A DNA stretch of 64,000 nucleotides from Macrostomum lignano (taxonomy: Eukaryota), in NCBI GenBank assembly GCA_002269645.1, contig NIVC01001128.1:280850-344849 (forward strand), read 5' to 3'. Under the pieces are notes generated by a model, which searched no databases, was not told the origin of the DNA, and worked only from the letters and a program-made list of their open reading frames with translations. How positions within the stretch are numbered: position 1 is the stretch's first letter; each line of letters begins with the position of its first letter. This document shows positions 7,301 through 39,404 of the stretch, piece by piece. Position numbers and translations under genes: made by a program.

Positions 7301-7396
7301 AGCACACCATGCAGGTCAATCCACGCGCTGCGCTTCCAAGGGGTGTCAATTCGTGCATGCGATCGTTAGCCTGTGTACGGCAGCAAGCCGCACTCT

Positions 7397-8127
7397 CCAT
7401 CACAATCCACCATCAGTCCATCACCAGTTCGTCACAATCTACCGCAGTCCATCACAGTCCATCACAGTCTATCACAGTCCAACACAGTCCATCACAGTCC
7501 GTCACAGTCTACCACAGTCCATCACAGTCTATCACAGTCCATCACAGTCCATCTCCAGTCCATCACCAGTTCGTCACAGACTATTAATACAGTCCATCAC
7601 AGTCCATCAAAGTCCATCACAGTCCATCACAGTCTATCACAGTCTACCACAGTCCATCACAGTCCATCACAGTAGTCCATCATAGTCCATCACGGTCCAT
7701 CACAGTCCATCTCCAGTCCATCACCAGTTCGTCACAGACTATTACCACAGTCCATCACAGTCCATCACAGTATATCACAGTTCATCAGAATCTATCACAG
7801 TCCATCACAGTCTATCACAGTCTACCAAAATCCGTCACAGTCCATCAATTTCCATCACAGTCCATCACAGTCCGTCACAGTCCATCACAGTCCATCAAAG
7901 TCCGTCACAGTCCATCACAGTCTATCACAGTCTATCACAATCCATCACAGTCTATCACAATCCATCACAGTCCATCACAGTCTATCCACAGTCTATCACA
8001 GTCCATCATCCATCACAGTCTATCACAATCCATCACAGTCTATCACAGTCCATCGTCACAGTCTATCACAGTCCATCACAGTCCATCGTCACAGTCCATC
8101 ACAGTCAATCACAGACCATCACAGTCT
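7397..8127. repeat. 10-bp minisatellite (CCATCACAGT)n
   Basis: Directly visible. The ORFs over it (SPSQSITVHH repeats) are repeat artefacts. Confidence 0.95.
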
Positions 8128-8690
8128 ATAGAATTCAGAGACAGACGTGTAGAAAGAATATTTATATATATTTCCTAGAATTAATAACGAGATTTCTAGG
8201 TAGAAATTATTATAAATCCAAAACGCACTGTACATGAATTAATCCGGCCTCAAATATCAATAAAAAGCCTGAGTCACATCAGACAGTCTGTCAGCTAACA
8301 TAAACGCAGTGGTGATGTCCCGCCCCATCAGAGTATTTTGATAAAAGTACAAACGAAAGTTACCAGACAGCCGTTCGCTGCCAAATTCTTAGAGTTGCTT
8401 TAAAGCTTGCTATCTGAGACGATCGGGACTGACACCCATAGCGTATTTGGCTTCGATCTTCGCCCCAACCAGTAAGCCAGGACTGCACGCTAAAAACATG
8501 TCTATGGCTGAAACCCCGAGGCTCAGTCTAGGGAGCGGGCTAAAGCGGCCCCGCTCGCAGCGCAGCAACGACTTTTACCCAACCCATCGATCGGCAACAG
8601 CTCGCTCATTCCAGGGGAGCAAAAAAGATCTGCTAAACAGCTTTTAGCGACCGTTAATGCGAGTTTGACTGCGAGTTCGTCAAAGAAGTA

Positions 8691-9101
8691 ATGAACATCA
8701 ATGGCTGCGCGCCCAATTGGTGCGACGCAAATTGGAAGGACTGCATCCACCGGTGGAAGCGGAGCCGGGAAAAGTGGCGCGCCGAGGCCGTCAAACTGCA
8801 GAAGCAGCTCTGCGAAATGACTCGCACAGCTTTCCATTGGCGCCAGCAGGCCAACATAATGAAGTGCGAATACTGCAAAACCCGCGACGCGCTGGCCAAA
8901 TGGCGGGCGGAGGCGATGCGCTGTCGAGAGTCCACCAGGCAATGGAAGATCGAGGCTTGCCGCTGGCGCGAACAGGCCAGGTGCTGGAAGCAGCGCTGCG
9001 CGGAGCTGATGGACCGCAAGGACGACCAGATGATCGCCATGATGTGCCAGTCGCGACAACGCCAGTGCGCCCAGATGCAATCAATGTACCCAGGCTGCTA
9101 A
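8691..9101 (+). CDS. Intronless 136-aa Trp/Cys-rich predicted coiled-coil protein of unknown function
   Basis: Codons are GC3-rich like the exons of the recognised genes. Trp at residues 15, 22, 29, 50, 71, 85, 92 and 99 (all 1 mod 7); heptad consensus W[RK]x[EQ]Ax[KR]; 13 Cys. Confidence 0.65.
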   Translation: MNINGCAPNWCDANWKDCIHRWKRSREKWRAEAVKLQKQLCEMTRTAFHWRQQANIMKCEYCKTRDALAKWRAEAMRCRESTRQWKIEACRWREQARCWKQRCAELMDRKDDQMIAMMCQSRQRQCAQMQSMYPGC

Positions 9102-10550
9102 GCAACTGCGGCACTCTCCCCCCGGTCAACTCGAAAGCCGACTCTCAAACACCCGGTGACTGCAGACTTAAATAGAAGTATTGCATGCGTAATGGTTGAC
9201 CAGCTCGCCGCTCTCTGACTGCAAACTTTCTATAACCGCCCAGTTTGACTTCCCATCCGCGTCTCCGATATTTGCCCACCCCAATGGCATTGCTTGTATG
9301 AAAGCCTAAACAATGTTCATTGAGCCCCGACCTTGCTCGTGCATTACCCCAATTGTTTAATATCGACGAGTAAATTCTTAGCCCAACTCGCAGGTAATAA
9401 TCCTCGGCAGGCAACTTATTTGACCTTCCGGTAGCAGCAAAAAATTTTTATTTCGCGACGCATTCGCACAGAAAGACGGTCTTGTGTATATTTGCATGTA
9501 ACATTACCACTGTCCGGAGCCGCGCTTATTTCTAACGGTATATATTCATCTGCCCAAAACTGTACTCAAAACACTCGATAATCGTTTGCTGCATTTTTTC
9601 TCCAAGCAATTGCTGGGACTTAACCTAAAGGTTCTCGCGGCAATTTGCTAAACACGAATTGTTTTTTTCTTTGAAATAAATGCGTCCCATCCATATACAA
9701 CTAACTAAATATTTCGTATTGCACTCTCGCTTCGGCACATTATTTTCATGTTCCAAAAGGCTGGCCTTTGCCACTCTGGCGGTAAATATACCATTAATTT
9801 TGTAATCGTACGAAGTCTAGTAAGAAAATAGAAGACATCCGTTTATATAGAGGCCATGTATAAAAGCAAAAATTGAACGTCTTTTACTCGCATTAATAAA
9901 ATTAAATAACTTTGCCTAAAAGCAATTAGCAATTAGAACTTGCAGACAAGTTGATAAAAGACGACCCATTGAAGTAGCATACATGCAGCTTACGGCTAAC
10001 TAATGCTAAACCAAGCCCTTGAACTGTAAGATTAACCTCTATGGCCCAACTTCCAAATTCATGAAAAAGGAATACGCGCACACGATGTAATGAAAACTTA
10101 TCGTTGTACTTATAATTTAAAGCTACAAATTTACATGCATATTAAATAGCTAAATAAGATTGCGCTCAGCAAGGTGAAGCTTTTTATTTGAACTCTTCCA
10201 AAAGTACACCAGTACTTTAGTAATAGTTATAGTAAGTACAAAATAGCATCGCTTTCAAGCCGCATTCGTACAGGTGTGTAATTACGCAAAAATAATAAAA
10301 ATCCTAATTGCAAATTCGAAGGTGCAATCATCCCAAGTTTAACGACCACGTTAAAAAACCGAAATGAAAAAACCAAGCACTTGCAGTATATACTACTTAC
10401 GTATGCGTAGCGGGCATCGCGTATGTCAGTTTAGCATTGAAAGCGAATAAAATATTCATGAACTGCAGTTCAATTTAACATTTAATTCATTACAAGCATT
10501 GAAACCCGTAGTACACTGCAGATATATGACACCACCTTGCCTAAAGCTCA

Positions 10551-11514: not shown

Positions 11515-12190
11515 ATCAATCAATCAGCATATCCATCAATCAACACATCAATCAATCAACTCAAAAATCAATCAACACATCAATCAGTCAACACATCAAT
11601 CAATCAACCCCTCAATCAATCAACACATCAATCAATCAACACATCAATCAATCAACTGATCGATCATTCAACACATCAATCAGTCAACACATCAATCAAT
11701 CAACTGATCGATCAATTAACTGATCAATCAGTCAACTCATCAATCAATCAACTCATCAATCAATCAACTGATCAATCAATCAACTCATCAATCAATCAAC
11801 TGATCAATCAATCAACTCATTAATCAGTCAACTCATCAATCAATCAGCTGATTAATTAATCAACTCATCAATCAATCAACTCATCAATCAATCAACTGAT
11901 CAATCAATCAACTGATCAATCAATCAACTCATCAATCAATCAACTGATCAATCAATCAACTGATCAATCAATCAACTCATCAATCAGTCAACTCATCAAT
12001 CAATCAGCTGATTAATTAATCAACTCATCAATCAATCAACTCATCAATCAATCAACTCATCAATCAATCAACTCATCAATCAATCAACTGATCAATCAAT
12101 CAACTCATCCATCAATCAACTCATCAATCAATCAACTGATAAATTAATCAACATATAAGTCAATCAACACATCAGTTAATCAACTGATAA
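11515..12190. repeat. TCAA-based compound micro/minisatellite just 3' of the arrestin gene
   Basis: (TCAA)n interrupted by CTCA/CTGA/CACA. Begins just past the ATTAAA (minus strand, about 12213-12218) that follows the stop codon. Confidence 0.9.
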
Positions 12191-12234
12191 TTCAGTTAAC
12201 GCATCAATAGTTTAATAAAAAATTAATCAAGCAA

Positions 12235-15200
12235 TCAATCTTCAGCCGCATCACCGCCGTTCCCGTTGCTGCTAGCTCCGGCGGCCTCTTCAATCGGCGC
12301 TTTCTGATGCGTCAGCGCCTCGTCGTAGCTAGGCGGCGCCGTCGGCACCATGGTGAACATCGCCAAATCCGAGCTGTCAGGCGGTGGAGCCGACGGTGTA
12401 GTAGACAAGCTTGGGTAGAGAGACGAGCTCGTCTGCTGCGACTGTTGCGTCTGCAAGCCGACAGCGCCAACTCCGTTAGGCTCCCGGAGCGCTCGAACTC
12501 CGATAGCGATTTGTTCCTCTAACAGTACGCTGACTAACTCGGACTTCCGGTAGTCTGGTCCGATGCAAACCACCTGCGATAGCGGCTGGCCGGTGACTGC
12601 CGACAGCATCTGCGTGCTGCTGGTGATCTGCGAGGGGGAGGCGGAGCGATTCCCCGTTTAGGTGAGAATTACTGGGAGCCGCAATTCCCCATCAATCTCG
12701 TGTGCCACAATTCCCCATCAATCTCATGGTTCACTGGGAGCTGCAATTCCCCATCAATCTCATGGTTCACTGGGAGCCGCAATTCCCCATCAATCTCATG
12801 GTTCAGTGTGTGCCGCAATTCCCCATCAATCTCATGGTTCAGTGGGTGCCGCAATTCCCCATCAATCTCATGGTTCACTGGGAGCTGCAATTCCCCATCA
12901 ATCTCATGGTTCAGTGTGTGCCGCAATTCCCCATCAATCTCATGGTTCAGTGTGTGCCGCAATTCCCCATCAATCTCATGGTTCAGTGGGTGCCGCAATT
13001 CCCCCATACCCCATTCCAAAAGTTTACCCACCTGAACATAGTATTCGATCTCGATCAGCTTAGTAAACTTGTCCATATCGCTGGTGACAACCCAGGGCAC
13101 CTGGATTCGAATATCCTCAGGCGTGAGTCGTTCACCCTGGCGCAGTTTGCCCAGGCTCACGTGTTTCACCAGCAGCCGCTGCACTCGACGGAACTGGGCG
13201 CCGCTGTTGCTGTATGCCTGGGGAAGAAGCGAAAGGGATCCAATGATAGAAGCTGCGCGACCAGGGAAAGACTAGAAGACAATCGTGTCTTTTTTTAATA
13301 CTCTTGACTAGGAATGAAAACAATATTCATAATTTATTCATCAGGGACTATCAGGCAGACAATCTTCTTCTTCAGGGACTATCAGGCAGACAATCTTCTT
13401 CTTCAGGGACTATCAGGCAGACAATCTTCTTCTTCAGGGACTATCAGGCAGACAATCTTCTTCTTCAGGGACTATCAGGCAGACAATCTTCTTCTTCAGG
13501 GACTATCAGGCAGACAATCTTCTTCTTCAGGGACTATCAGGCAGACAATCTTCTTCTTCAGGGACTATCAGGCAGACAATCTTCTTCTTCAGGGACTATC
13601 AGGCAGACAATCTTCTTCTTCAGGGACTATCAGGCAGACAATCTTCTTCTTCAGGGACTATCAGGCAGACAATCTTCTTCTTCAGGGACTATCAGGCAGA
13701 CAATCTTCTTCTTCAGGGACTATCAGGCAGACAATCTTCTTCTTCAGGGACTATCAGGCAGACAATCTTCTTCTTAAGGGACTATCGGGAAGACAATTTT
13801 CTTTAAGGACTATAAGGAAGACAATCTTCTTTTTTTAGGGACCATCAGGCAATCTTCTTCATCAGGACGACAATATTCTTCAGGGACTATCAGGCAGGCA
13901 ATCTTCTTCTTCAAGGACTATCTTCTGACAAGACAATCTTCTGGGGAATGCTCAATTTTGTTAAATTATGTTACAAAAAATGTTTTTTTGAGTAAACTTA
14001 CTTTCAGAATGCCCTTCTGCACCAGACAGGCGTTCAAATTCTCCAATTTAGCCTTGGAGTTGTTATAAATTTCGATTTGCAAGACAATAGTCTCCCCGAA
14101 ACCGTAGCCTCTCTTAGTGGCAACTAATCGAGCGGTTACTAGGCCGGTGTCCAATTTGGAGCGACTTGGCGACCAGGCATCGATTGGTTCGGCCAGGTGT
14201 AACCTTCCAGAGTACTTATTAAGATCTAGATCGTTAATAACAACCAGCGGTAAGGTGACCTCGTGACTTTTTCCGCCGCAGTCTAGGAAGGCGGTCAGCT
14301 TGTAGTACACCACGGTCATGAACGAGCTGGGCAGATCCGTTGGCAGGTGAAATTCGAACGGGCACTTGTAGAGTTCGTTGCGAGAAATTTTTTTGGCTGA
14401 CGGGTTCGACTGCAGGTGGCGGGTTGGGTTTGGGTTGGCAGTTAGGTAGGTTGCCTCACGAATTCCTAATCCCTTCAGGCATTTCATTAACTTCCCTAAT
14501 CCCCTCAAACATCTTCTTAACTTCCTTAATCCCCTCAGGCAGCTACTTAACTTCCCTGATCCTCTCAGGCAGCTACTTAACTTCCCTAATCCCCTCAGGC
14601 AGCTACTTAACTTCCCTAATCCTCTCAGGCAGCTACTTAACTTCCCTAATCCTCTCAGGCAGCTACTTAACTTCCCTAATCCCCTCAGGCAGCTACTTAA
14701 CTTCCTTAATCCCCTCAGGCAGCTACTTAACTTCCCTAATCCCCTCAGGCAGCTACTTAACTTCCCTAATCCCCTCAGGCAGCTACTTAACTTCCCTAAT
14801 CCCCTCAGGCAGCTACTTAACTTCCCTAATCCCCTCAGGCAGCTACTTAACTTCCCTAATCCCCTCAGGCATTTCATTAACTTCCCTAATCTCCTCAAAC
14901 ATCTTCTTAACTTCCCTAATCCCCTCAGGCAGCTACTTAACTTCCCTAATCCCCTCAGGCAGCTACTTAACTTCCCTAATCCCCTCAGGCAGCTACTTAA
15001 CTTCCCTAATCCCCTCAGGCAGCTACTTAACTTCCCTAATCCATCAATCACCTTAATTTCCTTAATCCCTTCAATAATACCTTAACTTCACTAATCCTTC
15101 AATCATCTCTTTAACTAATCTTTCCTAAGCTTTCCTTCAATCATACCTGAAGGGATTAGGGAAGTTAAGGAGATCCCTAAACTAAAGCCGGGATTGAGTA

Positions 15201-15837
15201 ACAGAAATAAAATAAGAATTACAAAAATGCGGAACTTAAATTAAATGGCATCGAGCTGGGAAAGAACCAGGTACGGGTACCAAATAGGCATCAACTAGCC
15301 ATCAAGCGACAAGGGTTCAAACTTCAAATTCACTCAGGATCCCAAAGTGAAAGCTGGTTGCGACACGACATAAGCTATGCCGCTATGAAACAAAGTACCC
15401 AGAGGCAGATGGGGCATTGGTTTAGTTCAGCTACACGATATATCCAGATTCCAGACAAACCATTCTAGTCAATACTACACTCCTGTACCAGCATTAGAGC
15501 CAGAAAATTGATTGAAGCTAAGAAGTAAGAACTGCCTGTTCCTTAAGGATATTTAATTATTATTACTATAATAATCATTACTAACCTTGGCGTAGACAAT
15601 CTGCGCCAATCGAATATAGGTCTCGTTATCTTCGCACACAGTAGTTGACCTAGAACCCGTCGCGCCCTGGCCGTCTTGGAATTCAACTTGACCGCCGCCA
15701 AACAGGTGCACCATTATTCTGGCTATGTCGACGTCTTTCTTTAATCGAAGCAGCAATTCGCCGCGTACAACGCCGCCAGTTAGAATAGGCCGGCCGGGAT
15801 TCTCTAATTTGAATTCGAAGACGTCAAGCTTGGTCAT
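12235..15837 (-). CDS. Alpha-arrestin (arrestin N/C domain protein, ARRDC/TXNIP family), about 412 aa, 4 exons
   Basis: Exons 15837-15586, 14409-14002, 13217-13032 and 12627-12235, all phase 0 with GT-AG sites. Arrestin-like motifs (VRGELLLRLKKDVDIARIMVHLFGGGQV; PFEFHLPTDLPSSF; KRGYGFGETIVLQIEIYN) and a C-terminal PPxY (APPSY). Confidence 0.85.
12676..13005. repeat. 36-bp minisatellite in arrestin intron 3, about 9 copies
   Basis: Unit GCAATTCCCCATCAATCTCATGGTTCACTGGGAGCC. Confidence 0.95.
13341..13930. repeat. 31-bp minisatellite in arrestin intron 2
   Basis: Unit CAGGGACTATCAGGCAGACAATCTTCTTCTT; about 14 near-perfect copies, then degenerate copies. Confidence 0.95.
14462..15130. repeat. 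30-bp minisatellite in arrestin intron 1
   Basis: Unit CTTCCCTAATCCCCTCAGGCAGCTACTTAA; contains CCCTAA (TTAGGG on the sense strand). Confidence 0.95.
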
Positions 15838-20146: not shown

Positions 20147-25333
<5,187 letters not shown>

Positions 25334-27160: not shown

Positions 27161-30100
27161 CAATCATCATTGCCACAATCCCCATTATGAGCATTGAGAA
27201 CCCACCGATTGACAAAGTCAATAACAGCGGCTACGCTGGTCAAATAATTGAAGAAATGCGCCTCAGCCCGACTCAATCGATCCTCGAGCATGTGCACCAG
27301 GTGATAGTGAAACACCGGATAGGGTAGGCCCAGACTCAAGCTCAGCCATAAAAATCGTCGAACGCACTCGTTAGGCGTTGTCAACGGCCTCTCTGGCGAG
27401 AACATGGCCGGATTGCGTATTAGGCCTCTGGCGGACATGACGCCTAAACAGCCAGTAAGAGAATGTAATCTGTCCGCGTCCAATAGATTAAACACGTCGC
27501 CATTGGCAACCAGAGCTATGCGGGTCGGCAAAATGGAGCGTAGTCGGGCTAAAGCTTCCCAGTCTGCCGGCTCGTGACGCTGGGTTGGAGTGCGACAGTG
27601 CACAGTTATCCAATCTGCTCCGGCCTTGTCGAGGGTCTGAGTGGGTAAGAGCGGCAAAAGCTATTTTTTACTTATCTCACAGACAATGTACATTCTGAAT
27701 TTGGGCGTCCATTTTTAGCACACTGGCAATGTAAATTTTGGGTTTAGGCATCTATTTCTAGCACACTGGCAATGTACATTCTGGATTTGGGCGGCTATTT
27801 TTAGCACACTGGCAATGTACATTCTGGGTTTAGGCGGCCATTTTTAGCAAACTGGCAATCTACATTCTGGGTTAGGCGTCTATTTTTAGAACACTGTTGT
27901 ACGAGCTACATTTGGGCAGCTATTTTTGTCGCACTCCAAACTGGCAATCTACATTCTGGGTTTAGGCGTTTTTAGAACACTGGCAATGTACATTCTGGGT
28001 TTAAGTGTCTATTTTTAGCACACTGGCAATGTACATTCTAGATGTGGGCGTCTATTTTTAGCAACAACAACAACAACAAAATACGCTGTCATGATGGTAA
28101 AAGTCAGCGTCACAGGGCGCGCTTCATGGCTTGGGCGCGAACAAAGGCCGCGCCACCGGCAGTGTCCGGGGCGCCGGCGTCAGCCAGCAGACAGTCGACA
28201 TAACGCCGAGTTCGCGCTTGACCTCGCCGGTAGGGTGCCTGCAGCGTGAGCAGCAGCACCTCCTGCACCGGCTGTGGGCAGTACGACTCGGCGCGGATGA
28301 GATGGCCTGCGAGCTGGAGTCGCCGACGGCGCAGTAGATCACTTGGACGTGGCAGGCCAGCGCGGCGATAGAGTGCCGCGTTGGTGACTCGCTCGACGCC
28401 GATGTTGAAGGCGGCGCGCAGCAGACCAGCGTGCGCCGCATCGACTTGCTGTTCGAGTGAGTCCGTCAGCGTCCAGGTCTCGGCGTTGTACAGCAGGACG
28501 GTCTCGATTACCGCCTGGAACAGCGCCGCCCTCTGGCGGTCCGGTAGGGCCTCGGACTGCAGGACTGCCCTCACAGAACGAAAGGCAGCCCAGGCAAGCC
28601 CGCGGCGGCGTCGCAGGTCCTCGCGAGCGTCTGGAACCAGACCGCCGAGGTAGACGAACTGCTGACATCGCGGGAGTTCGGTCGCCTGCCCGTCAGCGCC
28701 TCGGCAAAATATTGCAGCCTCGATGTCGTCCGGCACGCAGAGCACAACGGTCTTCTGCGTGTTGACCACCAGGCCGACACTCGCCGCAACGGCAACCAGC
28801 CTGTCCAGCTGCCGTTGGGCGCCCTCGACGGTCGAGGACAGCAGGGCGAGGTCGTCGGCGTAGCCAAGCACGCTGAGCCGCTTCTCCGGTTGACGTCGAC
28901 CCACGCGTCGCTGCAGCAGAAAACCGTCGTCGTCGGTAGGAAGAGCAGTCCGCAGCACCCAGTCAAGCACCAGGACGAACAGAAACGGCGCCAGCGTATC
29001 TCCCTGAAGCACTCCGGAGGATGTCTCAAAGGAGTCCGATAGGCCGTCCGGTGTTGTCACAGCAGCTGTCGTATCACGGTACATCGCCATGACGGCGGAG
29101 ATCAGCTGCTCAGGCACGTTGTACGCGCGGAGCACCATTGGAAGCACGGCTCTGACAACCGAGTCGAATGCCTTCTTGAAATCAATAAAGATTAAAATCA
29201 GTATCGACTGACGAATCCGCGCCTCCTCGATGACTCGGCGAAGAGCCAGGATCTGCGCCACTGTGCCGCGATGGGGCCGGAACCCGTTCTGCTCTGGGCG
29301 CAGGTACGGATCCAGCACGGGCTGCAACCGCGAAAGCAGCATCCGGTTGAACAGCTTCGCTGCACAGGACTGAAGGCAGATGCCTCGATGGTCTTCAAGC
29401 CTAGTGGTGCCCGGCTTCTTTGGAACAGCGACGATGTGCGCCGTGGTCCATTCGTTGGGCGCCGCCTCACCGAAGAGCACGCGGTTCATCACTCTGGCGA
29501 CCTCAGCGGCCACACAGGGGATGCGCAGCGCCTCGATGGGCACCTCGTCCGGACCCAGCGCTTTCCCGCCCGGTGACTGCTGGGCGAGCTTGACAACGTC
29601 GGCTGCGTTGACTGGGGCTACGCTGAAACTCTCCTCTGCCGGCAGCGGCGTCTCCGGCGGCAGCGTCAGACTGTCTGGCAGCGGGGGTGGCGGCGCGTTG
29701 ACGATGGCGGCGAAGAACTCGCGCAGCTCGTTCCTACGCTCGTCCGGCGTGTCACCAGCCAGGTTCAGCGGATTGCGCCGCTTTCGTCCCGTCAGAGCGT
29801 TGATGGCGGACCAGGCCACGCGCCCTCTGGCATCGGGCCCAGCGGCAGAGACAGCCTGAATGGCGTCATCGACAGCCGCTTGTTGGCGCTGCAGGTAGAC
29901 AGCTGCCAGAGCTGCCTCTGCCTCGCGGGTTGGTCGCCTGCTCAAGCGGAGCTTCTCCAGATCTTCCCTCGCTGCCTGAATCGCGGGGTCGTCCTGCCAG
30001 ACCGGCTGCCCACGTTGAGCCGGCTGCATCATCGGGACTGCTTGCTCCGCGGCGGTTCTGATTGCAGCGCACACTTCCGCATACTCGGCACTTCCACGCT

Positions 30101-32514
30101 TGTCGCCCAGCGCGGTGTTAAAGGCGCTAGCAAAGCGACGCTGCGTATCGGTGGCTCTGAGCGCGCGGTAGTAGCGCCGCGGTGGCCGCTTCGGCGGACG
30201 GTAGAGCGGATCGCGAAGGTTGAGGTCGCAGATGAGGAGCCGGTGATCGGACCGCAGAGCCAGCGGCGTGATGGTGCGGCAGTTGACGGCGCGACGACGC
30301 TCACGGAAACGCACGAGCACGTGGTCGAGCTGTGCTTGTCTCCGGGTTGCGTTCCTGCCACGCGCGTTCCGTCGCCTCCGCTTGCAGCCCACGAAGGTTG
30401 CGAGACCGCTCAGTGGCTTGCGGAAGCGGGTGTTGGCCGACACCATGTCCTGCCTCTCCAGGAAGTCCTCCAGTGCCTCGGTGTTGTTGTTCCCGCGTGG
30501 CGTCACGAACAGCGACCTCTCGGACCTACGCAGGACTGCGTTCAGGTCTCCGAGGGCGACCGCTGTGTCACGCTGCGCCGTCGCCTCTACCTGCACTGAG
30601 AGCTGCTCGAAAAACTCTTGAGCCTCGTCAGGGCGTGTGGCAGGGGGCGCGTACGCGCAGAACAGGCGAGCATTCCGACCGCGTAGCCGGACGTCGATCC
30701 GAAGCAACCGGGGGGACAGGGAGATGCAGCGACAGCTCTGCTGCAGCCTCGGCCCGATCAGCGCTCCAACTCCTCCACGGCCTCGCTGGTCCGCAGAAGT
30801 ATAGTAGAGGGTCCACCCGGCGCCCAAGTCCTCACAATGAAGTCCCGGGTCGGCCTTGATAGACACCTCCTGCAGCGAGATGATGTCGCAGCTCAGGTCG
30901 TACGCCAGCTTCGCCAGCACCCCTCTACGCCAAGCAGCCTTGAGAGTGCGGCAGTTCAGCGTCCCGACCCGAAGCATGCCCTGTGGTACGGCTGTCTTAA
31001 TTTATTTGCAGTCTTAATTTATTTGCAGTCTTAATTTATTTGCAGTCTTAATTTATTTGCAGTCTTAATTTATTTGCAGTCTTAATTTATTTGCAGTCTT
31101 AATTTATTTGCAGTCTTAATTTATTTGCAGTCTTAATTTATTTGCAGTCTTAATTTATTTGCAGTCTTAATTTATTTGCAGTCTTAATTTATTTGCAGTC
31201 TTAATTTATTTGCAGTCTTAATTTATTTGCAGTCTTAATTTATTTGCAGTCTTAATTTATTTGCAGTCTTAATTTATTTGCAGTCTTAATTTATTTGCAC
31301 CACGGTGCAGATAAATGCCGCTACCTCCTCGTGGTCAGAGCGGAGAGCCGCGCTTAACTGCTGCGGCGGCCAAATGCGGCAGGACCAAGCGAGGGCAGCG
31401 GAGCGCCCGTCGGCGTGTTGAGCGCCGGCGTGAGCGGAACCGACGAGGCCGGCTGCGTGGCGCCGCCCGTCGAGCTGCCGCGCGGGTCCACTCGGATCCT
31501 CCGGGTGGCGCCGGGGACCGTGAGGCTCATTTTTAGCACACTGGCAATGTACATTCTGGATTTAAGCGTCTATTTTTAGCACACTGGCAATGTACATTCT
31601 GGATTTGGGCGGCTATTTTTTAGCACACTGGCAATGTACATTCGGGATTTGGGCGGCTATTTTTTAGCACACTGGCAATCTACATTCTAGGTTTAAAATT
31701 TACATTGGGCTACTTTCATACTGCTCTGCCCCTCACCAACATGCTTGGGCGCAATCTAAGGATTCACCAGGCCGTTTCTATTGGCAACACACACTACACA
31801 CACATGTAAGTCGCTATTGGACAGAATAGTAGTCACGTGACTGCTCTCAGCCAATAGCGACTTACATATGTGTGTTGCCAATAGAAACGGCCGGTGATCC
31901 CCAAGGTTGCGCATGTATGCTCACCAAGCACAGCCGCTCCGTGTCGCGCATATCCGGACACAATCGAATTTTTGCGGATAGCGCAAACTTGTTCGGACAT
32001 CGCAGCGCCGCCCTGGCAGCCGTGAACATCTCTGCTAACAGTTGCGGCTGTGAGCACAAACAAACGCCAAGATTCTGCTGATTGGCCCAGCGTTGCGGAC
32101 AGCCGCAATTCAAATCCACGCCGTCGCAGTGCGGCTCGACCAACCGGACGCAGGCGGCGAACTCTGCCGGATCATTAGAAGCGAACTGCACTATGAGAGG
32201 CCGGTCGCCCGGCCCAGTGACGAATTCGTTGTCCCTGGCCTTGTCGGAGCACAGAAAGGACGAAGCGACGATCATAGGCGTGTAGCACAGGTCGCAGCCG
32301 TACTGACGCACCAGATAGCGAAACGGAAGCTTGGAGTAGCGAACCCGGGTGCGCAGATGCGGACGTACGGCCTGCCGGGCTGGCAGAATTTTGACAGCTT
32401 GCTGCGCTCGCTTGACGACTGGAATTTTGTAAGATGGAATAGGATAATATAAGCGGCAAACATTGCGGATGCTATTTTGTCTTAGTGACTAATTAGAAGC
32501 TGATATTACTACAC

Positions 32515-32547
<33 letters not shown>

Positions 32548-32623
32548 CATTAGATAGATAGATAGATAGAAAGAAAGATACATTAGACAGATAGATAGAT
32601 AGATAGATACATTAGATAGATAC

Positions 32624-32714
<91 letters not shown>

Positions 32715-32796
32715 TAGATAGATAGATAGATAGATAGATAGGTAGATAGATGGATTAGATAGATAGATAGATAGATAGGTAGATAGATAGATACAT

Positions 32797-32828
<32 letters not shown>

Positions 32829-32837
32829 AAGATACAT

Positions 32838-32890
<53 letters not shown>

Positions 32891-32943
32891 GGATGGATGG
32901 ATGGATGGATGGATAGATAAATCAGATAGATAGATAGATAGAT

Positions 32944-32988
<45 letters not shown>

Positions 32989-32997
32989 GGATGGATG

Positions 32998-33028
<31 letters not shown>

Positions 33029-33105
33029 GGATGGAGAGATAGATGGATGGATGGATGGATGGATGGATGGATGGATAGATACATCAGATAGATAGATAGA
33101 TAGAT

Positions 33106-33138
<33 letters not shown>

Positions 33139-33247
33139 GGATGGATGGATAGATAGATAGATAGATAGATAGATGGATGGATAGATAGATGGATGGATGG
33201 ATGGATGGATGGATGGATAGATACATCAGATAGATAGATAGATAGAT

Positions 33248-33280
<33 letters not shown>

Positions 33281-33369
33281 GGATGGATGGATAGATAGAT
33301 AGATAGATAGATAGATGGATGGATAGATAGATGGATGGATGGATGGATGGATGGATGGATAGATACATC

Positions 33370-33409
<40 letters not shown>

Positions 33410-33494
33410 GGATGGATAGATAGATGGATAGATAGATAGATGGATGGATAGATAGATGGATGGATGGATGGATGGATGGATGGATAGATACATC

Positions 33495-33554
<60 letters not shown>

Positions 33555-33615
33555 GGATGGATGGATGGATGGATGGATGGATGGATAGATACATCAGATA
33601 GATAGATAGATAGAT

Positions 33616-33652
<37 letters not shown>

Positions 33653-33661
33653 GGATGGATG

Positions 33662-33712
<51 letters not shown>

Positions 33713-33802
33713 TAGATAGATTAGATAGATAGATAGATAAAGATACATAGATGGCTAGAGAAAATACTGGGGCAATTGTACTAAACTTACCATTACAATC
33801 AT
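27160..33802 (-). CDS. DUS4L: tRNA-dihydrouridine(20a/20b) synthase DUS4L, 3 exons, apparent 1-nt frameshift in exon 2
   Basis: Exons 33802-33791 (MIVM, tentative), 32418-31925 and 27636-27160. Motifs [69 protein letters not shown]. One base is missing at ICAP-(M)-VRY, about 32343-32350. Confidence 0.88.
28110..30977 (-). CDS. RTE ORF: apurinic endonuclease + reverse transcriptase, 955 aa
   Basis: APE motifs [23 protein letters not shown] and SDH; RT motifs [32 protein letters not shown] and YADD. No stops. Confidence 0.96.
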   Translation of the reverse strand: MLRVGTLNCRTLKAAWRRGVLAKLAYDLSCDIISLQEVSIKADPGLHCEDLGAGWTLYYTSADQRGRGGVGALIGPRLQQSCRCISLSPRLLRIDVRLRGRNARLFCAYAPPATRPDEAQEFFEQLSVQVEATAQRDTAVALGDLNAVLRRSERSLFVTPRGNNNTEALEDFLERQDMVSANTRFRKPLSGLATFVGCKRRRRNARGRNATRRQAQLDHVLVRFRERRRAVNCRTITPLALRSDHRLLICDLNLRDPLYRPPKRPPRRYYRALRATDTQRRFASAFNTALGDKRGSAEYAEVCAAIRTAAEQAVPMMQPAQRGQPVWQDDPAIQAAREDLEKLRLSRRPTREAEAALAAVYLQRQQAAVDDAIQAVSAAGPDARGRVAWSAINALTGRKRRNPLNLAGDTPDERRNELREFFAAIVNAPPPPLPDSLTLPPETPLPAEESFSVAPVNAADVVKLAQQSPGGKALGPDEVPIEALRIPCVAAEVARVMNRVLFGEAAPNEWTTAHIVAVPKKPGTTRLEDHRGICLQSCAAKLFNRMLLSRLQPVLDPYLRPEQNGFRPHRGTVAQILALRRVIEEARIRQSILILIFIDFKKAFDSVVRAVLPMVLRAYNVPEQLISAVMAMYRDTTAAVTTPDGLSDSFETSSGVLQGDTLAPFLFVLVLDWVLRTALPTDDDGFLLQRRVGRRQPEKRLSVLGYADDLALLSSTVEGAQRQLDRLVAVAASVGLVVNTQKTVVLCVPDDIEAAIFCRGADGQATELPRCQQFVYLGGLVPDAREDLRRRRGLAWAAFRSVRAVLQSEALPDRQRAALFQAVIETVLLYNAETWTLTDSLEQQVDAAHAGLLRAAFNIGVERVTNAALYRRAGLPRPSDLLRRRRLQLAGHLIRAESYCPQPVQEVLLLTLQAPYRRGQARTRRYVDCLLADAGAPDTAGGAAFVRAQAMKRAL
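30994..31299. repeat. Perfect 17-bp x 18 array in the LINE leader
   Basis: Plus-strand unit GTCTTAATTTATTTGCA; sense unit TGCAAATAAATTAAGAC; 306 bp. Confidence 0.98.
31749..31912. repeat. About 164-bp near-perfect palindrome (foldback) just inside DUS4L intron 2
   Basis: Arms ...CACC(A)GGCCGTTTCTATTGGCAACACACA...ATGTAAGTCGCTATTGG and CCAATAGCGACTTACAT...GTTGCCAATAGAAACGGCCGGTG; centre AGTCACGTGACT. Confidence 0.9.
32517..33752. repeat. (GATA)n/(GGAT)n compound microsatellite in DUS4L intron 1
   Basis: Directly visible; higher-order blocks are marked by GATACATCAG. Confidence 0.98.
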
Positions 33803-36048: not shown

Positions 36049-39000
36049 TTAAGTGACATGATAATCTAGCACAACTTTGTGATAGAACAGCAGATAGCCC
36101 TCGGAGGTCAGCACCTCAGACACTGGCACATCGCTAATCTGGTGATCGTCGCATTTGTACCAGGTGTTACAATTGTGCCGCACGTAGCAGGTGTAGTGAC
36201 CGGCGCTCAGACTACCGGAGTGATTCACTACACAGAACAGGCGGTACTGTTTGCCAAGACGCTCCAACGAGTCGTCGTGATTAGCCTTGCTAGACATGAA
36301 CGGTGTCATGTCGAGCAGCTCGGGAAACGAGATGTGAGTGCTAATCTTCCTGTGATTCAGACAGGCGTGCTGGAACCGTTTGAAATGGAAACAGGCCACA
36401 ACTGGCAGCTTGCGAAAGGTCAACTGTTTAATAGAGTCTTGCACTGTCTGACAGCGGAAGCAGCGAATCTTGCCCAGATGCTCGGGGGCGATGTACCTGC
36501 AAACAATGCGGCACACCTGGGCATTTGCTTTTGAACATCCTTTTAAAAAGCCAAAAATAGACGATTCTTCCTAACGGAATTCCCCGCTAAAATCCCTCGA
36601 TTCCTCCGTAGAATCTTTAGATTCCCCAACGAAATCCTTCAAATTTCCCCCTGGATTATCCCTAGAATGTATAAAATCCACTTCGTATGCCTAAACTCCC
36701 TCCCTATAATGCCTAAATTCCCCCTGGAATGATTAAATTCCCCCTAGAACGCCTGAATCCCCTAGAACGCCTGAATCCCCTAGAACGCCTGAATCCCCTA
36801 GAACGCCTGAATTACCATGGAACGCCTGAATCCCCTAGAACGCCTGAATCCCCTAGAACGCCTGAATTACCATGGAACGCCTGAATTACCCTAGAACGCC
36901 TGAATTACCCTAGAACGCCTGAATTACCCTAGAACGCCTGAATTACCCTAGAACGCCTGAATTACCCTAGAACGCCTGAATTACCCTAGAACGCCTGAAT
37001 TACCCTAGAACGCCTGAATTACCCTAGAACGCCTGAATTACCCTAGAACGCCTGAATTACCCTAGAACGCCTAAATTACCCTAGAATGCACCCAAAATTT
37101 ATCTAGTGCCTAAGTTCCATTTAGAATGCCTAAATTCCCCAGAGAACCCATTAATTCATCATCTTAGCTCCCTAGATTGCCATACGAATTATCCGAGACC
37201 TCATTTTCTAAACGCCCCCTAAATTACCGCGCTGTTTTTACCAGCACCAGGCTCCTCTCTAAAGCTAAAATACCCACCGTTCCAGAGAGCAGCCAAGAGT
37301 CTGACTCTCGCTAGTCAGGGTATTCATATCCAACGAAATATCCCAAAACGGGTCGATAGTACGCGAGACGCTGTCGCAACCGAGACACTTGAGATCGGAC
37401 TGGAATTCACCAGAGAACACTTGGTCAACAATGCACCGGCATGGACTTCTCTGCTGCTGTTGCTGCTGCTGTAACTGCAGCTGATGACCAACTGTGCAAC
37501 CGTTCGGCTCTCCGCTGCCAGAATCGGCTTGGAAATGTTGGTGCAGCAGATTTAGAGCGGCCATTAGAAATTCGTGCGCGTCCTGCTGTTCGTAGCCGGC
37601 CAGATGGTGCGCGTGCACCCAGATTAAGTGCAGAGTGGAGCTCGGCACGAACGGATTATCGCAGTCGGAATAGAATTCGCGAAATAGTCGGGCAAACTCA
37701 CACACGAGGCAGGACAGGGCGGGGTGCTCGCGCAGGCTGGAGTGCGGATCCAATAGGAAGAAGTCGCGCAGCACGGGCGTGTGAACCAGTGCCTGATAGG
37801 GACGGTTTGTGGGTATTCTTGACCTGACACATATGGTATTAGGTGTGTCAGAGCTGTTCTTCATGTTGTGTCAGAACTGTTCTTCATGTTGGGTCAGAAC
37901 TGTTCTTCATGTTGTGTCAGAACTGTTCTTCATGTTGTGTCAGAACTGTTCTTCATGTTGTGTCAGAACTTTTTTTTCATGTTGTGTCAGAACTGTTCCT
38001 CATGTTGTGTCAGAACTGTTCTTCATGTTGTGTCAGCACTGTTTTTCATGTTGTGTCAGGACTGTTCTTCATGCTGTGTCAGAACTGTTTCTCATGTTGT
38101 GTCAGAACTGTTTCTCATGTTGTGTCAGAACTGTTCTTCATGTTGTGTCAGAACTGTTCTTCATGTTGTGTCAGAACTGTTCTTCATGTTGTGTCAGAGC
38201 TGTTCCTCATGTTGTGTCAGAGCTGTTCCTCATGTTGTGTCAGAACTGTTCTTCATGTTGTGTCAGAACTGTTCTTCATGTTGTGTCAGAACTGTTCTTC
38301 ATGTTGTGTCAGAGCTGTTCCTCATGTTGTGTCAGAGCTGTTCCTCATGTTGTGTCAGAACTGTTCCTCATGTTGTGTCAGAACTGTTCTTCATGTTGTG
38401 TCAGAGCTGTTCCTCATGTTGTGTCAGAGCTGTTCCTCATGTTGTGTCAGAGCTGTTCCTCATGTTGTGTCAGAACTGTTCCTCATGTTGTGTCAGAGCT
38501 GTTCTTCATGTTGTGTCAGAACTGTTCTTCATGTTGTGTCAGAGCTGTTCTTCATGTTGTGTCAGAACTGTTCTTCATGTTGTGTCAGAACTGTTCTTCA
38601 TGTTGTGTCAGAACTGTTCTTCATGTTGTGTCAGAACTGTTCTTCATGTTGTGTCAGAACTGTTCTTCATGTTGTGTCAGAACTGTTCATGTTGTGTCAG
38701 AATTGGTTTGTATGATGTGTCTGATCAGTTTTATTGTAGTCTTCTAACATCACCTTTGTGAACGAACAGTCCTTCTAGACAGTATGCTAACAGCCAAAAA
38801 GAATCAACTGATTTCTATACTACTTACTAAGTAGAAAAACGCTAGATTTACTAACCTGAACAATGCAGCTCATAAAGCAGGTATTGCCCAGATTAACCAG
38901 GCCGCGCAATCCCAGCAACTGATTAGTTGACACTCGCAGATTCAATCGATTCTTAGCCAGCACGGCTAGGAACTCCTCAGAGGGAATCCAGTCTTCGAAG

Positions 39001-39404
39001 AAGTTCGGCACGCCCAACGATTTGAAGGCCCGCCGTCGGCACTGACGCAGCATCTGCAGAAGGCTCAGATCGTAGCGATAATCCGAGCAATCGTGGCAGT
39101 ACACCTGGCCAGAGCTCAAATCCACACTTAGCCTAGCCTGAGATCCTCCGGCCGGATGCGCTGCGTCCACGTGACCTTGAATATGACCGTTGCCATAGCA
39201 ACCAAAGTGAACGCAGAGCAGGCAAGCGTGAACCCTGGCCGTACTGTCGCATTGGGCGCATTTCTGCTTCTGGGATTTCAGCACCCGTTCGACTGGACTG
39301 CGAGGATAAACGAGTCGCTTTAATAGCATCTCATATTGGCCGCGACCGGGACTCCCGGGCCCCAGCTGAGTGCTCAAGTGTTCGCAGGTGTACGCGGTTG
39401 CCAT
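36049..39404 (-). CDS. USP22: Ubiquitin carboxyl-terminal hydrolase USP22/Ubp8/nonstop (SAGA DUB), about 503 aa, 3 exons
   Basis: Exons 39404-38856, 37792-37278 and 36496-36049. ZnF-UBP (CAQC...HACLLCVHFGC...H...GQVYCHDCSDY), Cys box GLRGLVNLGNTCFMSCIVQ, EQQDAHEF, His box NHSGSLSAGHY, WYKCDD. Confidence 0.92.
36640..37150. repeat. 19-bp minisatellite in USP22 intron 2
   Basis: Unit CCCTAGAACGCCTGAATTA with degenerate flanks. Confidence 0.93.
37845..38703. repeat. 23-bp minisatellite in USP22 intron 1, about 37 copies
   Basis: Unit GTCAGAACTGTTCTTCATGTTGT. Confidence 0.97.

What the first reader, a model, noticed from the sequence alone, without database searches (positions are those of the whole stretch)
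8691..9101. Orphan 136-aa protein with tryptophan locked into a heptad register (natural Trp-zipper-like coiled coil)
Eight of nine Trp fall exactly 7n apart (15, 22, 29, 50, 71, 85, 92, 99). The remaining positions in that register are mostly L/M/C. The position +4 is usually small (A33, A47, A54, A75, A89, A96, C103), giving W[RK]x[EQ]Ax[KR] over about 13 heptads. Ordinary coiled coils use Leu/Ile/Val cores; I know Trp cores mainly from engineered pentameric Trp-zippers, and they imply a wide or higher-order bundle. The protein has 13 Cys and no signal peptide, so a cross-linked intracellular structural polymer (for example in sperm or the cortex) is conceivable (inference). The codons look like host exons, the ORF is intronless, and a TTTTAG acceptor-like site lies about 45 nt upstream. 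I do not recognise the family.
Basis: partly seen in the sequence, partly recalled or inferred. Interest (0 to 1): 0.8.

Follow-up and report, generated by a model that had tools for sequence, protein, structure and literature searches.

The report
Testis gene with tryptophan-striped coiled coil
This is a real, intronless gene of the flatworm Macrostomum lignano, one of five testis-region paralogs, and it encodes one long helix with a conserved tryptophan at every seventh residue, which most likely forms an unusual Trp/Ala-core coiled-coil rod in developing sperm.

Summary
ORF 8691-9101 (+) encodes 136 aa, and 8 of its 9 Trp fall in one mod-7 class (P about 5e-6). The window is Macrostomum lignano assembly GCA_002269645.1.

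The protein is not an orphan. It has four paralogs in the same genome, all with a single-exon CDS at dispersed loci. All eight heptad Trp are invariant across 15 indel-free heptads. Only the annotated frame evolves under constraint (dN/dS 0.11-0.37, dS saturated).

Published tables place the family (OG0001725_2) in 8-13 Macrostomum species. Every subfamily listed there is annotated 'Testis region' and highly expressed, with omega 0.065-0.26.

AlphaFold2 gives one helix (residues 15-132, pLDDT 88). Conservation by heptad position is the classic coiled-coil pattern: Trp/Leu/Met at d, Ala/Leu at a, basic e, Glu/Gln g.

No known family is matched. The closest natural analogues are the cholinesterase WAT tetramerisation helix (Pfam hit below threshold, explained mostly by the Trp spacing) and the phage T7 gp17 fibre coiled coil.

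The 13 Cys are mostly specific to this paralog.

The oligomeric state and the sperm role are inferred, not shown.

Verdict: a real feature and a new variant of a known kind, of moderate interest.

The parts
8691..9101 (+). Complete single-exon CDS (136 codons plus TAA) of the Trp-heptad protein, paralog A of the family
   Evidence: ORF listing and translation. The exact protein is a gene model on three contigs of GCA_002269645.1. Only this frame has low dN/dS and no stops against paralog B. ORF GC3 is 0.81 against flank GC 0.39.
8691..8732 (+). N-terminal non-helical cap (aa 1-14), containing C6, W10 and C11
   Evidence: pLDDT is below 50 for residues 1-7 and no helix is predicted before residue 15. 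M1 is invariant and C6 is present in 4 of 5 paralogs. A low-complexity insert of variable length follows in the paralogs.
8733..9047 (+). Fifteen uninterrupted heptads (aa 15-119): Trp/Leu/Met at d, Ala/Leu at a, Lys/Arg at e, Glu/Gln/Ser at g
   Evidence: Register tables. Per-position conservation is d 0.75, e 0.75, a 0.61, g 0.58, c 0.55, f 0.44, b 0.34. AF2 predicts a continuous helix 15-132 with block pLDDT 92-97.
8733..8780 (+). Trp triad 1 (W15, W22, W29; NWKDCIHRWKRSREKWR), the most conserved block of the family and WAT-like
   Evidence: Nearly every column is invariant in the paralogs. It aligns to WAT W10/W17/W24 of PDB 1VZJ. In P0007 the Pfam AChE_tetra stretch falls here.
8925..9002 (+). 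Trp triad 2 (W85, W92, W99; RESTRQWKIEACRWREQARCWKQRCA), WAT-like
   Evidence: hhalign of the family profile against the 1VZJ WAT peptide aligns aa 79-104 to WAT 4-29 at probability 61%. BLASTP gives 10/24 identities. The best Pfam AChE_tetra stretch in P0006 and P0002 maps to the homologous block.
9048..9098 (+). C-terminal tail (aa 120-136), Gln/Met/Cys-rich and poorly conserved, ending in Cys
   Evidence: Alignment A2. pLDDT falls to 65 in the last block.
8642..8647 (+). TTTTAG acceptor-like site, 43 nt upstream of the ATG; function unproven
   Evidence: Sequence. Acceptor-like sites are found only in paralogs A and D (43 and 29 nt) and far upstream in C, with none in B or E. The published trans-splice acceptor motif is [T/C]TNCAG (PMC8629364), which this site does not match.
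9675..9680 (+). First canonical AATAAA downstream of the stop (574 nt); a candidate poly(A) signal only
   Evidence: Pattern scan and sequence. No RNA data were available to confirm it.

Best explanation
The ORF is a real, transcribed, intronless gene of Macrostomum lignano. It is one of five dispersed paralogs of a Macrostomum-restricted family expressed in the testis region.

The protein is essentially one helix of about 118 residues, roughly 17 nm long, built from 15 uninterrupted heptads. One core position (d) carries the bulky Trp, or Leu/Met. The other core position (a, four residues later) carries Ala or another small or aliphatic residue. The flanking e position is Lys/Arg and the g position is Glu/Gln.

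I infer that it forms a parallel, multi-stranded coiled-coil rod, either with itself or with its co-expressed paralogs. These share exactly the same Trp/non-Trp layer pattern. In such a rod the Trp indoles would pack into the space left by the neighbouring Ala layers, and g-e' pairs would stabilise the in-register arrangement.

In paralog A, extra Cys at outward-facing b, c and f positions could cross-link rods by disulfides in maturing sperm. The role would then be structural, in spermatids or sperm.

Shown: the gene is real, the frame is constrained, the family exists, the Trp register is invariant, a helix is predicted, and the family carries a testis-region annotation. Inferred: coiled-coil assembly, orientation, strand number, disulfide cross-linking and the sperm-structural role.
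For: Gene reality:
- The exact protein is an annotated gene model on three contigs, and paralog B on four.
- The GenBank annotation of this assembly derives only from RNA-seq-based transcript models (PMC5730564).
- Only the annotated frame shows low omega without stops (0.15 against 0.4-1.5 for the others).
- Pairwise omega across four paralogs is 0.11-0.37 with saturated dS.
- ORF GC3 is 0.71-0.87 against flank GC 0.39-0.50.
- The start codon is conserved in all paralogs.

Family and expression:
- Only M. lignano proteins are found among 1.84e9 representatives and 5.8e9 clusters.
- In PMC8662610 Table S1, OG0001725_2 is split into five ortholog sets covering 8-13 species. All are annotated 'Testis region', all fall in the high-expression bin, and omega is 0.065-0.264.

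Structure:
- 8 of 9 Trp share one register (P about 5e-6), and all eight are invariant in five paralogs across 15 indel-free heptads.
- AF2 gives a single helix 15-132, pLDDT 88.
- Conservation ranks d = e > a > g > c > f > b. The e position is 63% Lys/Arg with no acidic residue, and g is Gln/Glu/Ser.
- A strict 7-residue Trp spacing over 85 residues would drift about 240 degrees around a straight 3.6-residue helix. One continuous interface therefore requires supercoiling (geometric inference).
- Weak generic coiled-coil Pfam similarities are seen: CCDC113/96, BicD, MIP-T3.
- A natural aromatic-[RK]-x-[EQ]-A heptad coiled coil exists in T7 gp17 (PMC13485008).
Against: - No experiment or multimer prediction shows oligomerisation. 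AF2 on a monomer returns long helices for many sequences.
- Trp is rare in natural coiled-coil cores and is reported as poorly tolerated in some designs (bioRxiv 10.1101/2021.02.01.429152).
- Parallel W-W layers alternating with A-A layers may pack badly. An antiparallel or ligand-filled arrangement is not excluded.
- The testis-region annotation is documented by gene ID for paralogs B, C and E. The window copy itself is linked to Mlig013763 only through its length of 136 codons (inference).
- 'Testis region' comes from positional RNA-seq, not in situ hybridisation or proteomics.
- The surface Cys are not conserved among paralogs, so cross-linking cannot be a property of the whole family.
Confidence: 0.55

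Rival explanations
1. WAT-like clamp. [quoted passage not shown] The indoles would stack on the Pro rings. This protein would be a free-standing, extended version with two Trp triads plus two further in-register Trp.
For: - The Pfam AChE_tetra model (PF08674) is the only specific, non-generic family that appears. Scores are 19.1 bits (E = 0.0011) for P0006, 11.6 for P0002 and 8.5 for P0007, each with two stretches that map to the two Trp triads.
- BLASTP of paralog B against the 1VZJ WAT peptide gives 11/21 identities (RQWKAE..RW......WK).
- hhalign of the family profile gives probability 61%.
- The WAT sequence was verified against PDB 1VZJ.
- WAT/PRAD architecture: four helices around an antiparallel PPII helix (bioRxiv 10.1101/431288).
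Against: - All scores are below the Pfam cut-off of 25 bits, and the window protein itself gives no hit.
- Shuffles that keep only the Trp positions already reach 18-20 bits against 21-29 observed, so most of the resemblance is the Trp spacing.
- WAT has large residues at +4 (F14, M21, F28), where this family conserves Ala.
- The central heptads have ordinary Leu/Met/Tyr cores.
- No proline-rich partner is known, and none is encoded next to the paralog C locus that was inspected.
Confidence: 0.15
2. Surface-binding amphipathic helix. The Trp stripe, flanked on both sides by Lys/Arg, would bind a membrane interface or nucleic acid, for example sperm chromatin during condensation. The protein would act as a monomer or a loosely associated coat rather than a coiled coil.
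For: - Four of five paralogs are basic, pI 9.1-10.4.
- Trp is followed by Lys/Arg in 11 of 13 central heptads, and position c is 36% basic.
- The family is annotated to the testis region, where chromatin condensation proteins act.
Against: - Paralog E is neutral (pI 7.15) yet keeps every Trp, so charge is not the conserved property.
- Helices that bind flat surfaces use periodicities of 3.6 or 11/3 residues, whereas here the period is exactly 7 over 85 residues.
- The strict conservation of small residues at +4 is characteristic of helix-helix packing.
Confidence: 0.12
3. Antiparallel Alacoil-type pairing. Each core layer would pair a Trp of one helix with an Ala of the other, giving a layer volume like Leu+Val. 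The assembly would be an antiparallel dimer or tetramer.
For: - Ala or a small residue recurs every seventh position next to the Trp register: A33, A47, A54, A75, A89, A96, C103.
- A hand-checked antiparallel register, in which paired residue numbers sum to 118, pairs W22-A96, W29-A89, W71-A47 and W85-A33. This is inference from the sequence, not scored against shuffles.
Against: - Position e is almost all basic and g is acidic or polar. Antiparallel packing would juxtapose e-e' (Arg/Lys against Arg/Lys) and g-g'.
- The same register also gives bulky clashes (W50-L68, M57-Y61, W99-I19).
- AF2 does not fold the chain into a hairpin.
Confidence: 0.12
4. Spurious ORF or non-functional transcript in GC-rich, repeat-rich DNA.
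For: - Several overlapping ORFs of 112-185 aa exist in other frames of the same stretch.
- The window is crowded with minisatellites.
Against: - Five paralogs keep this frame open with omega 0.11-0.37 at saturated dS, while the alternative frames accumulate stops or have omega near or above 1.
- Published omega across 8-13 species is 0.065-0.26, with high expression.
Confidence: 0.02

Closest known systems
WAT (tryptophan amphiphilic tetramerisation) helix of acetylcholinesterase-T and butyrylcholinesterase (Pfam PF08674; PDB 1VZJ)
   Same: Both are amphiphilic helices with three Trp exactly 7 apart, each followed by Lys or a basic residue. Local strings are shared: RQWKAE..RW and WK...HRW. 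A Cys lies downstream in both. WAT is a natural example of heptad-spaced Trp driving a left-handed superhelical assembly.
   Different: WAT is a 40-residue C-terminal appendage of an alpha/beta-hydrolase. It has large residues (F/M/F) at +4 and needs a central polyproline-II helix. Here the protein is free-standing, about 118 helical residues long, with eight Trp, Ala at +4 and ordinary Leu/Met heptads in the middle. Scores are below the Pfam threshold and are mostly explained by the Trp spacing. Homology is unproven.
Proximal triple coiled coil of phage T7 tail-fibre protein gp17
   Same: It has the same heptad word, aromatic-[RK]-x-[EQ]-A-x-x: FRNEAET, FRNQAEG, FKNESST, WRDETKG, FRDEAKR. Aromatic residues fall 7n apart at 171, 178, 185, 199, 206, 213 (alignment). 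It is a natural trimeric coiled-coil rod (PMC13485008).
   Different: It uses mostly Phe rather than Trp and is a viral fibre protein. The match is not significant (E = 0.34), and tblastn of the window protein finds nothing in 50,697 phage records. This is convergence, not family membership. The gp17 coiled coil has itself not been resolved at atomic level.
Engineered Trp-zipper pentamer (Lpp-56 variant, PDB 1T8Z) and designed heterotrimers with one buried Trp
   Same: Trp occupies heptad core positions of a coiled coil (cited in bioRxiv 10.1101/2021.02.01.429152).
   Different: The pentamer has Trp at both a and d. Here only one core position is Trp and the other is Ala, so the mean core volume is close to an ordinary Leu/Val core. 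A wide pentameric barrel is therefore not implied. This protein is also natural and conserved.
Alacoil (tight antiparallel coiled coil with Ala every seventh residue; known to me from Gernert et al. 1995, not checked here)
   Same: A small residue is conserved once per heptad at a core position.
   Different: Alacoils are antiparallel. The basic-e, acidic-g pattern here favours a parallel arrangement, and the partner core residue is the largest amino acid.
Mlig-sperm1 (Mlig020950), the characterised flatworm-specific testis gene family of M. lignano
   Same: Both are lineage-restricted, testis-expressed M. lignano gene families without Pfam domains (PMC5816591).
   Different: The families are unrelated. 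Mlig-sperm1 has a mixed alpha/beta conserved domain, is conserved in planarians and has 35 M. lignano homologs. It was not retrieved by any search with this protein.

Membership tests
Alpha-helical coiled coil (structural class) | Uninterrupted heptad periodicity of apolar residues at a and d | tested here: met
   There are 15 heptads without an indel in five paralogs. Position d is 88% apolar (W/L/M) and position a is 72% A/L/I/V/C.
Alpha-helical coiled coil (structural class) | Continuous alpha-helix | tested here: met
   AF2 with the family alignment gives a helix 15-132 with block pLDDT 92-97. This is a prediction only.
Alpha-helical coiled coil (structural class) | Core and flanking positions (a, d, e, g) more conserved than surface positions (b, c, f) | tested here: met
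   Mean pairwise identity is d 0.75, e 0.75, a 0.61, g 0.58, c 0.55, f 0.44, b 0.34.
Alpha-helical coiled coil (structural class) | Two or more helices actually supercoil with knobs-into-holes packing | not testable with these tools
   Only monomer prediction was available. This needs multimer modelling, SEC-MALS/AUC or a structure.
WAT domain, Pfam PF08674 AChE_tetra | Score at or above the Pfam gathering threshold (25 bits) | tested here: not met
   Scores are 19.1 bits (P0006), 11.6 (P0002) and 8.5 (P0007). There is no hit for the window protein or for P0005.
WAT domain, Pfam PF08674 AChE_tetra | Three conserved Trp spaced 7 residues apart on an amphiphilic helix | tested here: met
   This is present twice (W15/22/29 and W85/92/99) and invariant in five paralogs. 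It aligns to WAT W10/17/24.
WAT domain, Pfam PF08674 AChE_tetra | Similarity beyond what the Trp spacing alone produces | tested here: inconclusive
   Shuffles with Trp fixed reach the real BLASTP score in 1, 2, 1, 12 and 44 of 300 trials for the five paralogs.
WAT domain, Pfam PF08674 AChE_tetra | C-terminal extension of a cholinesterase catalytic domain | tested here: not met
   The protein is a stand-alone 136 aa with an in-frame stop 36 nt upstream of the ATG. No hydrolase domain is found.
WAT domain, Pfam PF08674 AChE_tetra | Assembly of four helices around a proline-rich PPII helix (PRAD) | not testable with these tools
   No partner is known. This needs binding assays or complex prediction.
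Trp-zipper pentamer type core | Trp at both a and d core positions | tested here: not met
   Trp occupies only one core position, and the other is Ala or another small residue.
Alacoil | Small residue at the same core position in every heptad, and antiparallel helices | tested here: inconclusive
   A small residue (A/C/T/S) is present in about 9 of 15 heptads. Orientation is untestable here, and the e/g charge pattern argues for a parallel arrangement.
Transposable-element or viral protein | Significant similarity to TE or viral proteins, or location inside a repeat unit | tested here: not met
   There are no Pfam, PDB or phage hits. The copies sit in distinct single-copy neighbourhoods next to arrestin, Aldedh, dynamin and ANF-receptor genes.

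The most novel reading that the evidence does not exclude
The family is a free-standing, elongated relative or convergent twin of the cholinesterase WAT helix. Bundles of these Trp-striped helices would wrap a long polyproline-II segment of an unidentified proline-rich sperm protein. That would make a new type of composite (alpha-helix around PPII) cytoskeletal filament in flatworm sperm, which lack axonemes (the last point is from my own knowledge, not checked here).
Probability: 0.13. Interest if true: 0.75.

Novelty: new variant of a known kind. Interest (0 to 1): 0.5.

Why it matters
Aromatic residues make up less than 10% of the core positions in natural coiled coils, and Trp cores are known mainly from engineered peptides. 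A natural, strongly conserved protein with eight Trp at one core position and Ala at the other, over 15 heptads, would extend the sequence-to-structure rules used in coiled-coil design. It would also give a built-in fluorescence reporter of assembly.

Biologically, it marks an uncharacterised, abundant, testis-region gene family. The host is a model flatworm in which sperm morphology is a major object of sexual-selection research. Transgenesis and RNAi exist for this animal, so the function can be tested directly.

If the WAT-like reading held, it would be the second natural instance of a Trp superhelix assembled around polyproline.

Tried and rejected
- **Sequence and fold searches.** Pfam, PDB-sequence and Foldseek-PDB searches with the protein and the model gave nothing significant. 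A single helix is uninformative for fold search.
- **Phage records.** tblastn against phage records, to test the T7 gp17 resemblance, gave no match.
- **Gene IDs in the literature.** Full-text searches for the gene IDs found nothing. The supplements of PMC5816591 and PMC7336406 had no occurrence, though the stored files are truncated.
- **Allelic comparison as a constraint test.** Only 2 synonymous differences fall in the ORF, and the flanks from -600 to +600 are equally similar. This is uninformative.
- **Alternative reading frames.** Rejected by stops and omega near or above 1.
- **Tandem DNA repeat origin of the heptads.** Rejected, because no TRF array lies in the ORF.
- **Shared promoter or acceptor motif among the five paralogs.** No k-mer of 7-10 nt is shared by at least 4 of 5 upstream regions.
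- **Identity with the Mlig-sperm1 family.** Rejected.
- **Proline-rich partner gene next to paralog C.** The neighbour is a small secreted-looking protein and is not Pro-rich.
- **Homology to WAT.** Not accepted: scores are below threshold, and the shuffle control shows the Trp spacing explains most of the score.
- **Antiparallel register.** Inspected only by hand and not scored. I give it little weight.

Full report
**1. The observation**

- Trp lies at 10, 15, 22, 29, 50, 71, 85, 92 and 99, and eight of these share one mod-7 class.
- With nine Trp placed at random in 136 positions, at least 8 fall in one class with P about 5e-6. No other period from 2 to 14 approaches this.
- The other residues in the register are L36, M43, M57, T64, C78, L106 and Q113.
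- The +4 positions are A33, A47, A54, A75, A89, A96 and C103, and there are 13 Cys. All of this is as stated.
- TTTTAG lies at 8642-8647.
- An in-frame TAA at 8655-8657 makes ATG 8691 the first possible start.
- The periodicity is not a DNA tandem repeat. TRF reports nothing between 8126 and 9921.

**2. Where the window comes from, and whether the gene is real**

The exact protein is a gene model on three contigs of Macrostomum lignano assembly GCA_002269645.1. The window is identical to NIVC01001128.1. The three copies differ by one or two synonymous substitutions. This fits the known redundancy of this assembly (PMC5730564).

The GenBank annotation of this assembly was built only from RNA-seq-derived transcript models. 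A deposited protein therefore implies a transcript.

A 60%-identical paralog, P0002 (BOX15_Mlig029657), sits on four contigs. Codon-aligned comparison gives dN/dS 0.15-0.16 at saturated dS (about 2) in the annotated frame. The five other frames have stops or omega 0.4-1.5. The overlapping ORFs of 112-185 aa are by-products of composition. ORF GC3 is 0.81 against 0.39 GC in the flanks.

**3. The family**

An exhaustive HMMER scan of 1.84 billion representatives, plus a profile search of 5.8 billion clusters, found only M. lignano proteins. These fall into five paralog groups:

| Group | Protein | Length | Gene ID(s) |
|---|---|---|---|
| A | window protein (P0001) | 136 aa | not shown by the tools; inferred Mlig013763 |
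| B | P0002 | 143 aa | Mlig029657 |
| C | P0005 | 150 aa | Mlig026474 (truncated model Mlig005078) |
| D | P0006 | 149 aa | Mlig023814 (truncated model Mlig033173) |
| E | P0007 | 156 aa | Mlig033729 |

- All have a single-exon CDS at dispersed loci with unrelated neighbours.
- Pairwise omega among paralogs A-D is 0.11-0.37.
- From W15 to about residue 122 the five sequences align without a single indel, and all eight register Trp are invariant.
- Cys is not conserved in the same way. Only C18 and C103 are invariant, and C6 is nearly so.
- The extra Cys of paralog A lie mostly at outward-facing b, c and f positions: C41, C59, C62, C90, C98, C119 (register).

**4. Published information**

No paper names these genes in its text. 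Table S1 of PMC8662610 lists orthogroup OG0001725_2, split into five ortholog sets with one M. lignano gene each:

| M. lignano gene | Species | omega |
|---|---|---|
| Mlig013763.g1 | 13 | 0.065 |
| Mlig029657.g1 | 12 | 0.167 |
| Mlig026474.g1 | 10 | 0.208 |
| Mlig014861.g2 | 10 | 0.104 |
| Mlig033729.g1 | 8 | 0.264 |

- All five are annotated 'Testis region' and fall in the high whole-worm expression bin.
- Three of these IDs are paralogs B, C and E.
- The Mlig013763 alignment is 408 nt, or 136 codons, exactly the length of the window protein. I therefore infer, but could not verify, that the window gene is Mlig013763. That would make it the most conserved and most highly expressed member.
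- The family is thus genus-wide, under purifying selection and testis-associated, but it has never been characterised individually.
- It is unrelated to Mlig-sperm1.

**5. Structure**

AlphaFold2 with the family alignment gives one continuous helix, residues 15-132. Mean pLDDT is 88, and 92-97 in the heptad region.

I name the Trp position d. The residue types by heptad position are then:

| Position | Residues |
|---|---|
| d | W/L/M (88% apolar) |
| a (+4) | A/L/I (72% apolar or small) |
| e (+1) | 63% K/R, never acidic |
| g (+3) | Q/E/S |

- Conservation ranks d = e (0.75) > a (0.61) > g (0.58) > c (0.55) > f (0.44) > b (0.34). This is the signature of a helix-helix interface formed by g-d-a-e.
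- An exact 7-residue spacing over 85 residues cannot stay on one face of a straight 3.6-residue helix, so a continuous interface implies left-handed supercoiling (inference).
- Basic e and acidic or polar g favour a parallel, in-register arrangement through g-e' pairs. Antiparallel packing would oppose e to e'.
- Trp plus Ala has about the same combined volume as Leu plus Val, so the core need not be wide.
- Strand number, orientation and homo- versus hetero-assembly remain inferred. Multimer prediction was not possible with the tools.

**6. Comparison with known systems**

Nothing reaches significance in Pfam, PDB sequences or Foldseek. Two resemblances are instructive.

(a) *Pfam PF08674, the cholinesterase WAT tetramerisation helix.*
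- It is the only specific family to surface: 19.1 bits (E = 0.0011) in P0006, 11.6 in P0002 and 8.5 in P0007, against a cut-off of 25.
- WAT (PDB 1VZJ, sequence verified) has W10, W17 and W24 spaced by seven. Four WAT helices form a left-handed superhelix around an antiparallel polyproline-II helix.
- Both Trp triads of the flatworm protein align to it. Examples are RQWKAEAIRW against RQWKAEFHRW, and WKDCIHRW against WKAEFHRW.
- Shuffles that keep only the Trp positions already give 18-20 bits against 21-29 observed.
- WAT has F/M/F where this family conserves Ala, and WAT is an appendage of a hydrolase.
- I therefore treat WAT as a mechanistic analogue, not a family assignment.

(b) *The proximal triple coiled coil of T7 gp17.*
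- It carries the same word, aromatic-[RK]-x-[EQ]-A, in register (PMC13485008).
- The match is not significant (E = 0.34), and no phage record matches by tblastn.
- I read this as convergence.

**7. Function**

The best-supported reading is a parallel Trp/Ala-core coiled-coil rod of about 17 nm, made in spermatogenic cells. It may co-assemble with its four paralogs, which share the identical pattern of Trp and non-Trp layers. In paralog A it may be cross-linked through surface Cys.

Rivals:
- A WAT-like bundle around a proline-rich partner.
- A Trp/Arg amphipathic helix binding membrane or chromatin. This is weakened by paralog E, which keeps every Trp at pI 7.15, and by the 3.5-residue rather than 3.6-residue periodicity.
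- An antiparallel Alacoil-like pairing, weakened by the e/g charge pattern.
- A spurious ORF, effectively excluded.

**8. The upstream TTTTAG**

Acceptor-like sites are not positionally conserved among the paralogs, and no upstream k-mer is shared. The site does not match the published trans-splice acceptor motif [T/C]TNCAG. Trans-spliced genes in M. lignano are enriched for conserved genes rather than lineage-specific ones. Whether the site is used cannot be decided without the RNA tracks.

**9. Verdict**

The 'orphan' label is wrong, since this is a five-member family spread across the genus. The sperm-related guess is supported at the level of positional RNA-seq. The coiled-coil reading is well supported in silico but unproven, and the higher-order Trp-zipper reading is not supported. 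This is a new variant of a known kind, of moderate interest.

Noticed in passing
window 7396-8126, and throughout (e.g. 11515-12208, 13337-13851, 14465-15042, 22879-24207, 32515-33752, 37844-38702, 40799-41387, 54442-54938): The window is extraordinarily rich in mini- and microsatellite arrays, with 47 TRF rows scoring at least 200. They include a 10-bp unit repeated 71 times ending 565 bp upstream of the gene, an (ACAG)n array of 1.3 kb and an (AGAT)n array of 1.2 kb. These arrays explain the extreme skew values in the composition profile.
   Followed up: partly
L005 3701-5510 (allelic or homeologous copy of the locus on NIVC01003616.1); absent from the window copy: One of the three copies of this locus carries an insertion of about 4.2 kb encoding a hAT-type transposase (ZBED1 RNase-like helical domain plus Dimer_Tnp_hAT). 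It lies about 4.5 kb upstream of the gene and is a polymorphic TE insertion between copies.
   Followed up: partly
window 28110-30977 (-): An intact 955-aa ORF looks like a non-LTR (LINE-type) retrotransposon protein with an N-terminal endonuclease-like part and a reverse-transcriptase-like part. It sits in the most GC-rich stretch of the window (GC 0.63). It was identified by eye from the translation only.
   Followed up: no
window 57623-58549 (+): A 308-aa ORF resembles a Tc1/mariner-type transposase (helix-turn-helix N-terminus, DDE-like C-terminus). It was judged by eye only.
   Followed up: no
window 21326-24643 (-): Exons of an AMPK/SNF1-like protein kinase (…[34 protein letters not shown]…[11 protein letters not shown]…) are interrupted by the 1.3-kb (ACAG)n array, which reads through as a fake Cys/Leu/Ser-rich ORF.
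   Followed up: no
window 37265-39404 (-), 13966-15051 (-) and 53464-54393 (-): Further host gene fragments are present. One is a pair of ubiquitin-specific-protease-like exons (zinc-finger UBP and a Cys box, GLVNLGNTCFMSCIVQ). One is an exon of the arrestin gene called in the locus table at L006 13545-17147 (about window 12235-15837), partly overlapped by a 30-bp minisatellite. One is a Gln-rich 309-aa ORF with an internal 114-bp repeat.
   Followed up: no
window 8657-8668 (+): A three-codon upstream ORF (ATG CGA GTT TGA) lies between the TTTTAG site and the main ATG, out of frame with the CDS. It is relevant only if the 5' UTR extends that far.
   Followed up: no
L001-L004 and L005-L007: Paralog B is present in four DNA-identical CDS copies, and paralog A in three copies that differ only at synonymous sites. 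The flanks differ by 3-6%, mostly through repeat-length changes. This is a small window onto the redundancy of the assembly and the duplicated state of the M. lignano genome.
   Followed up: partly
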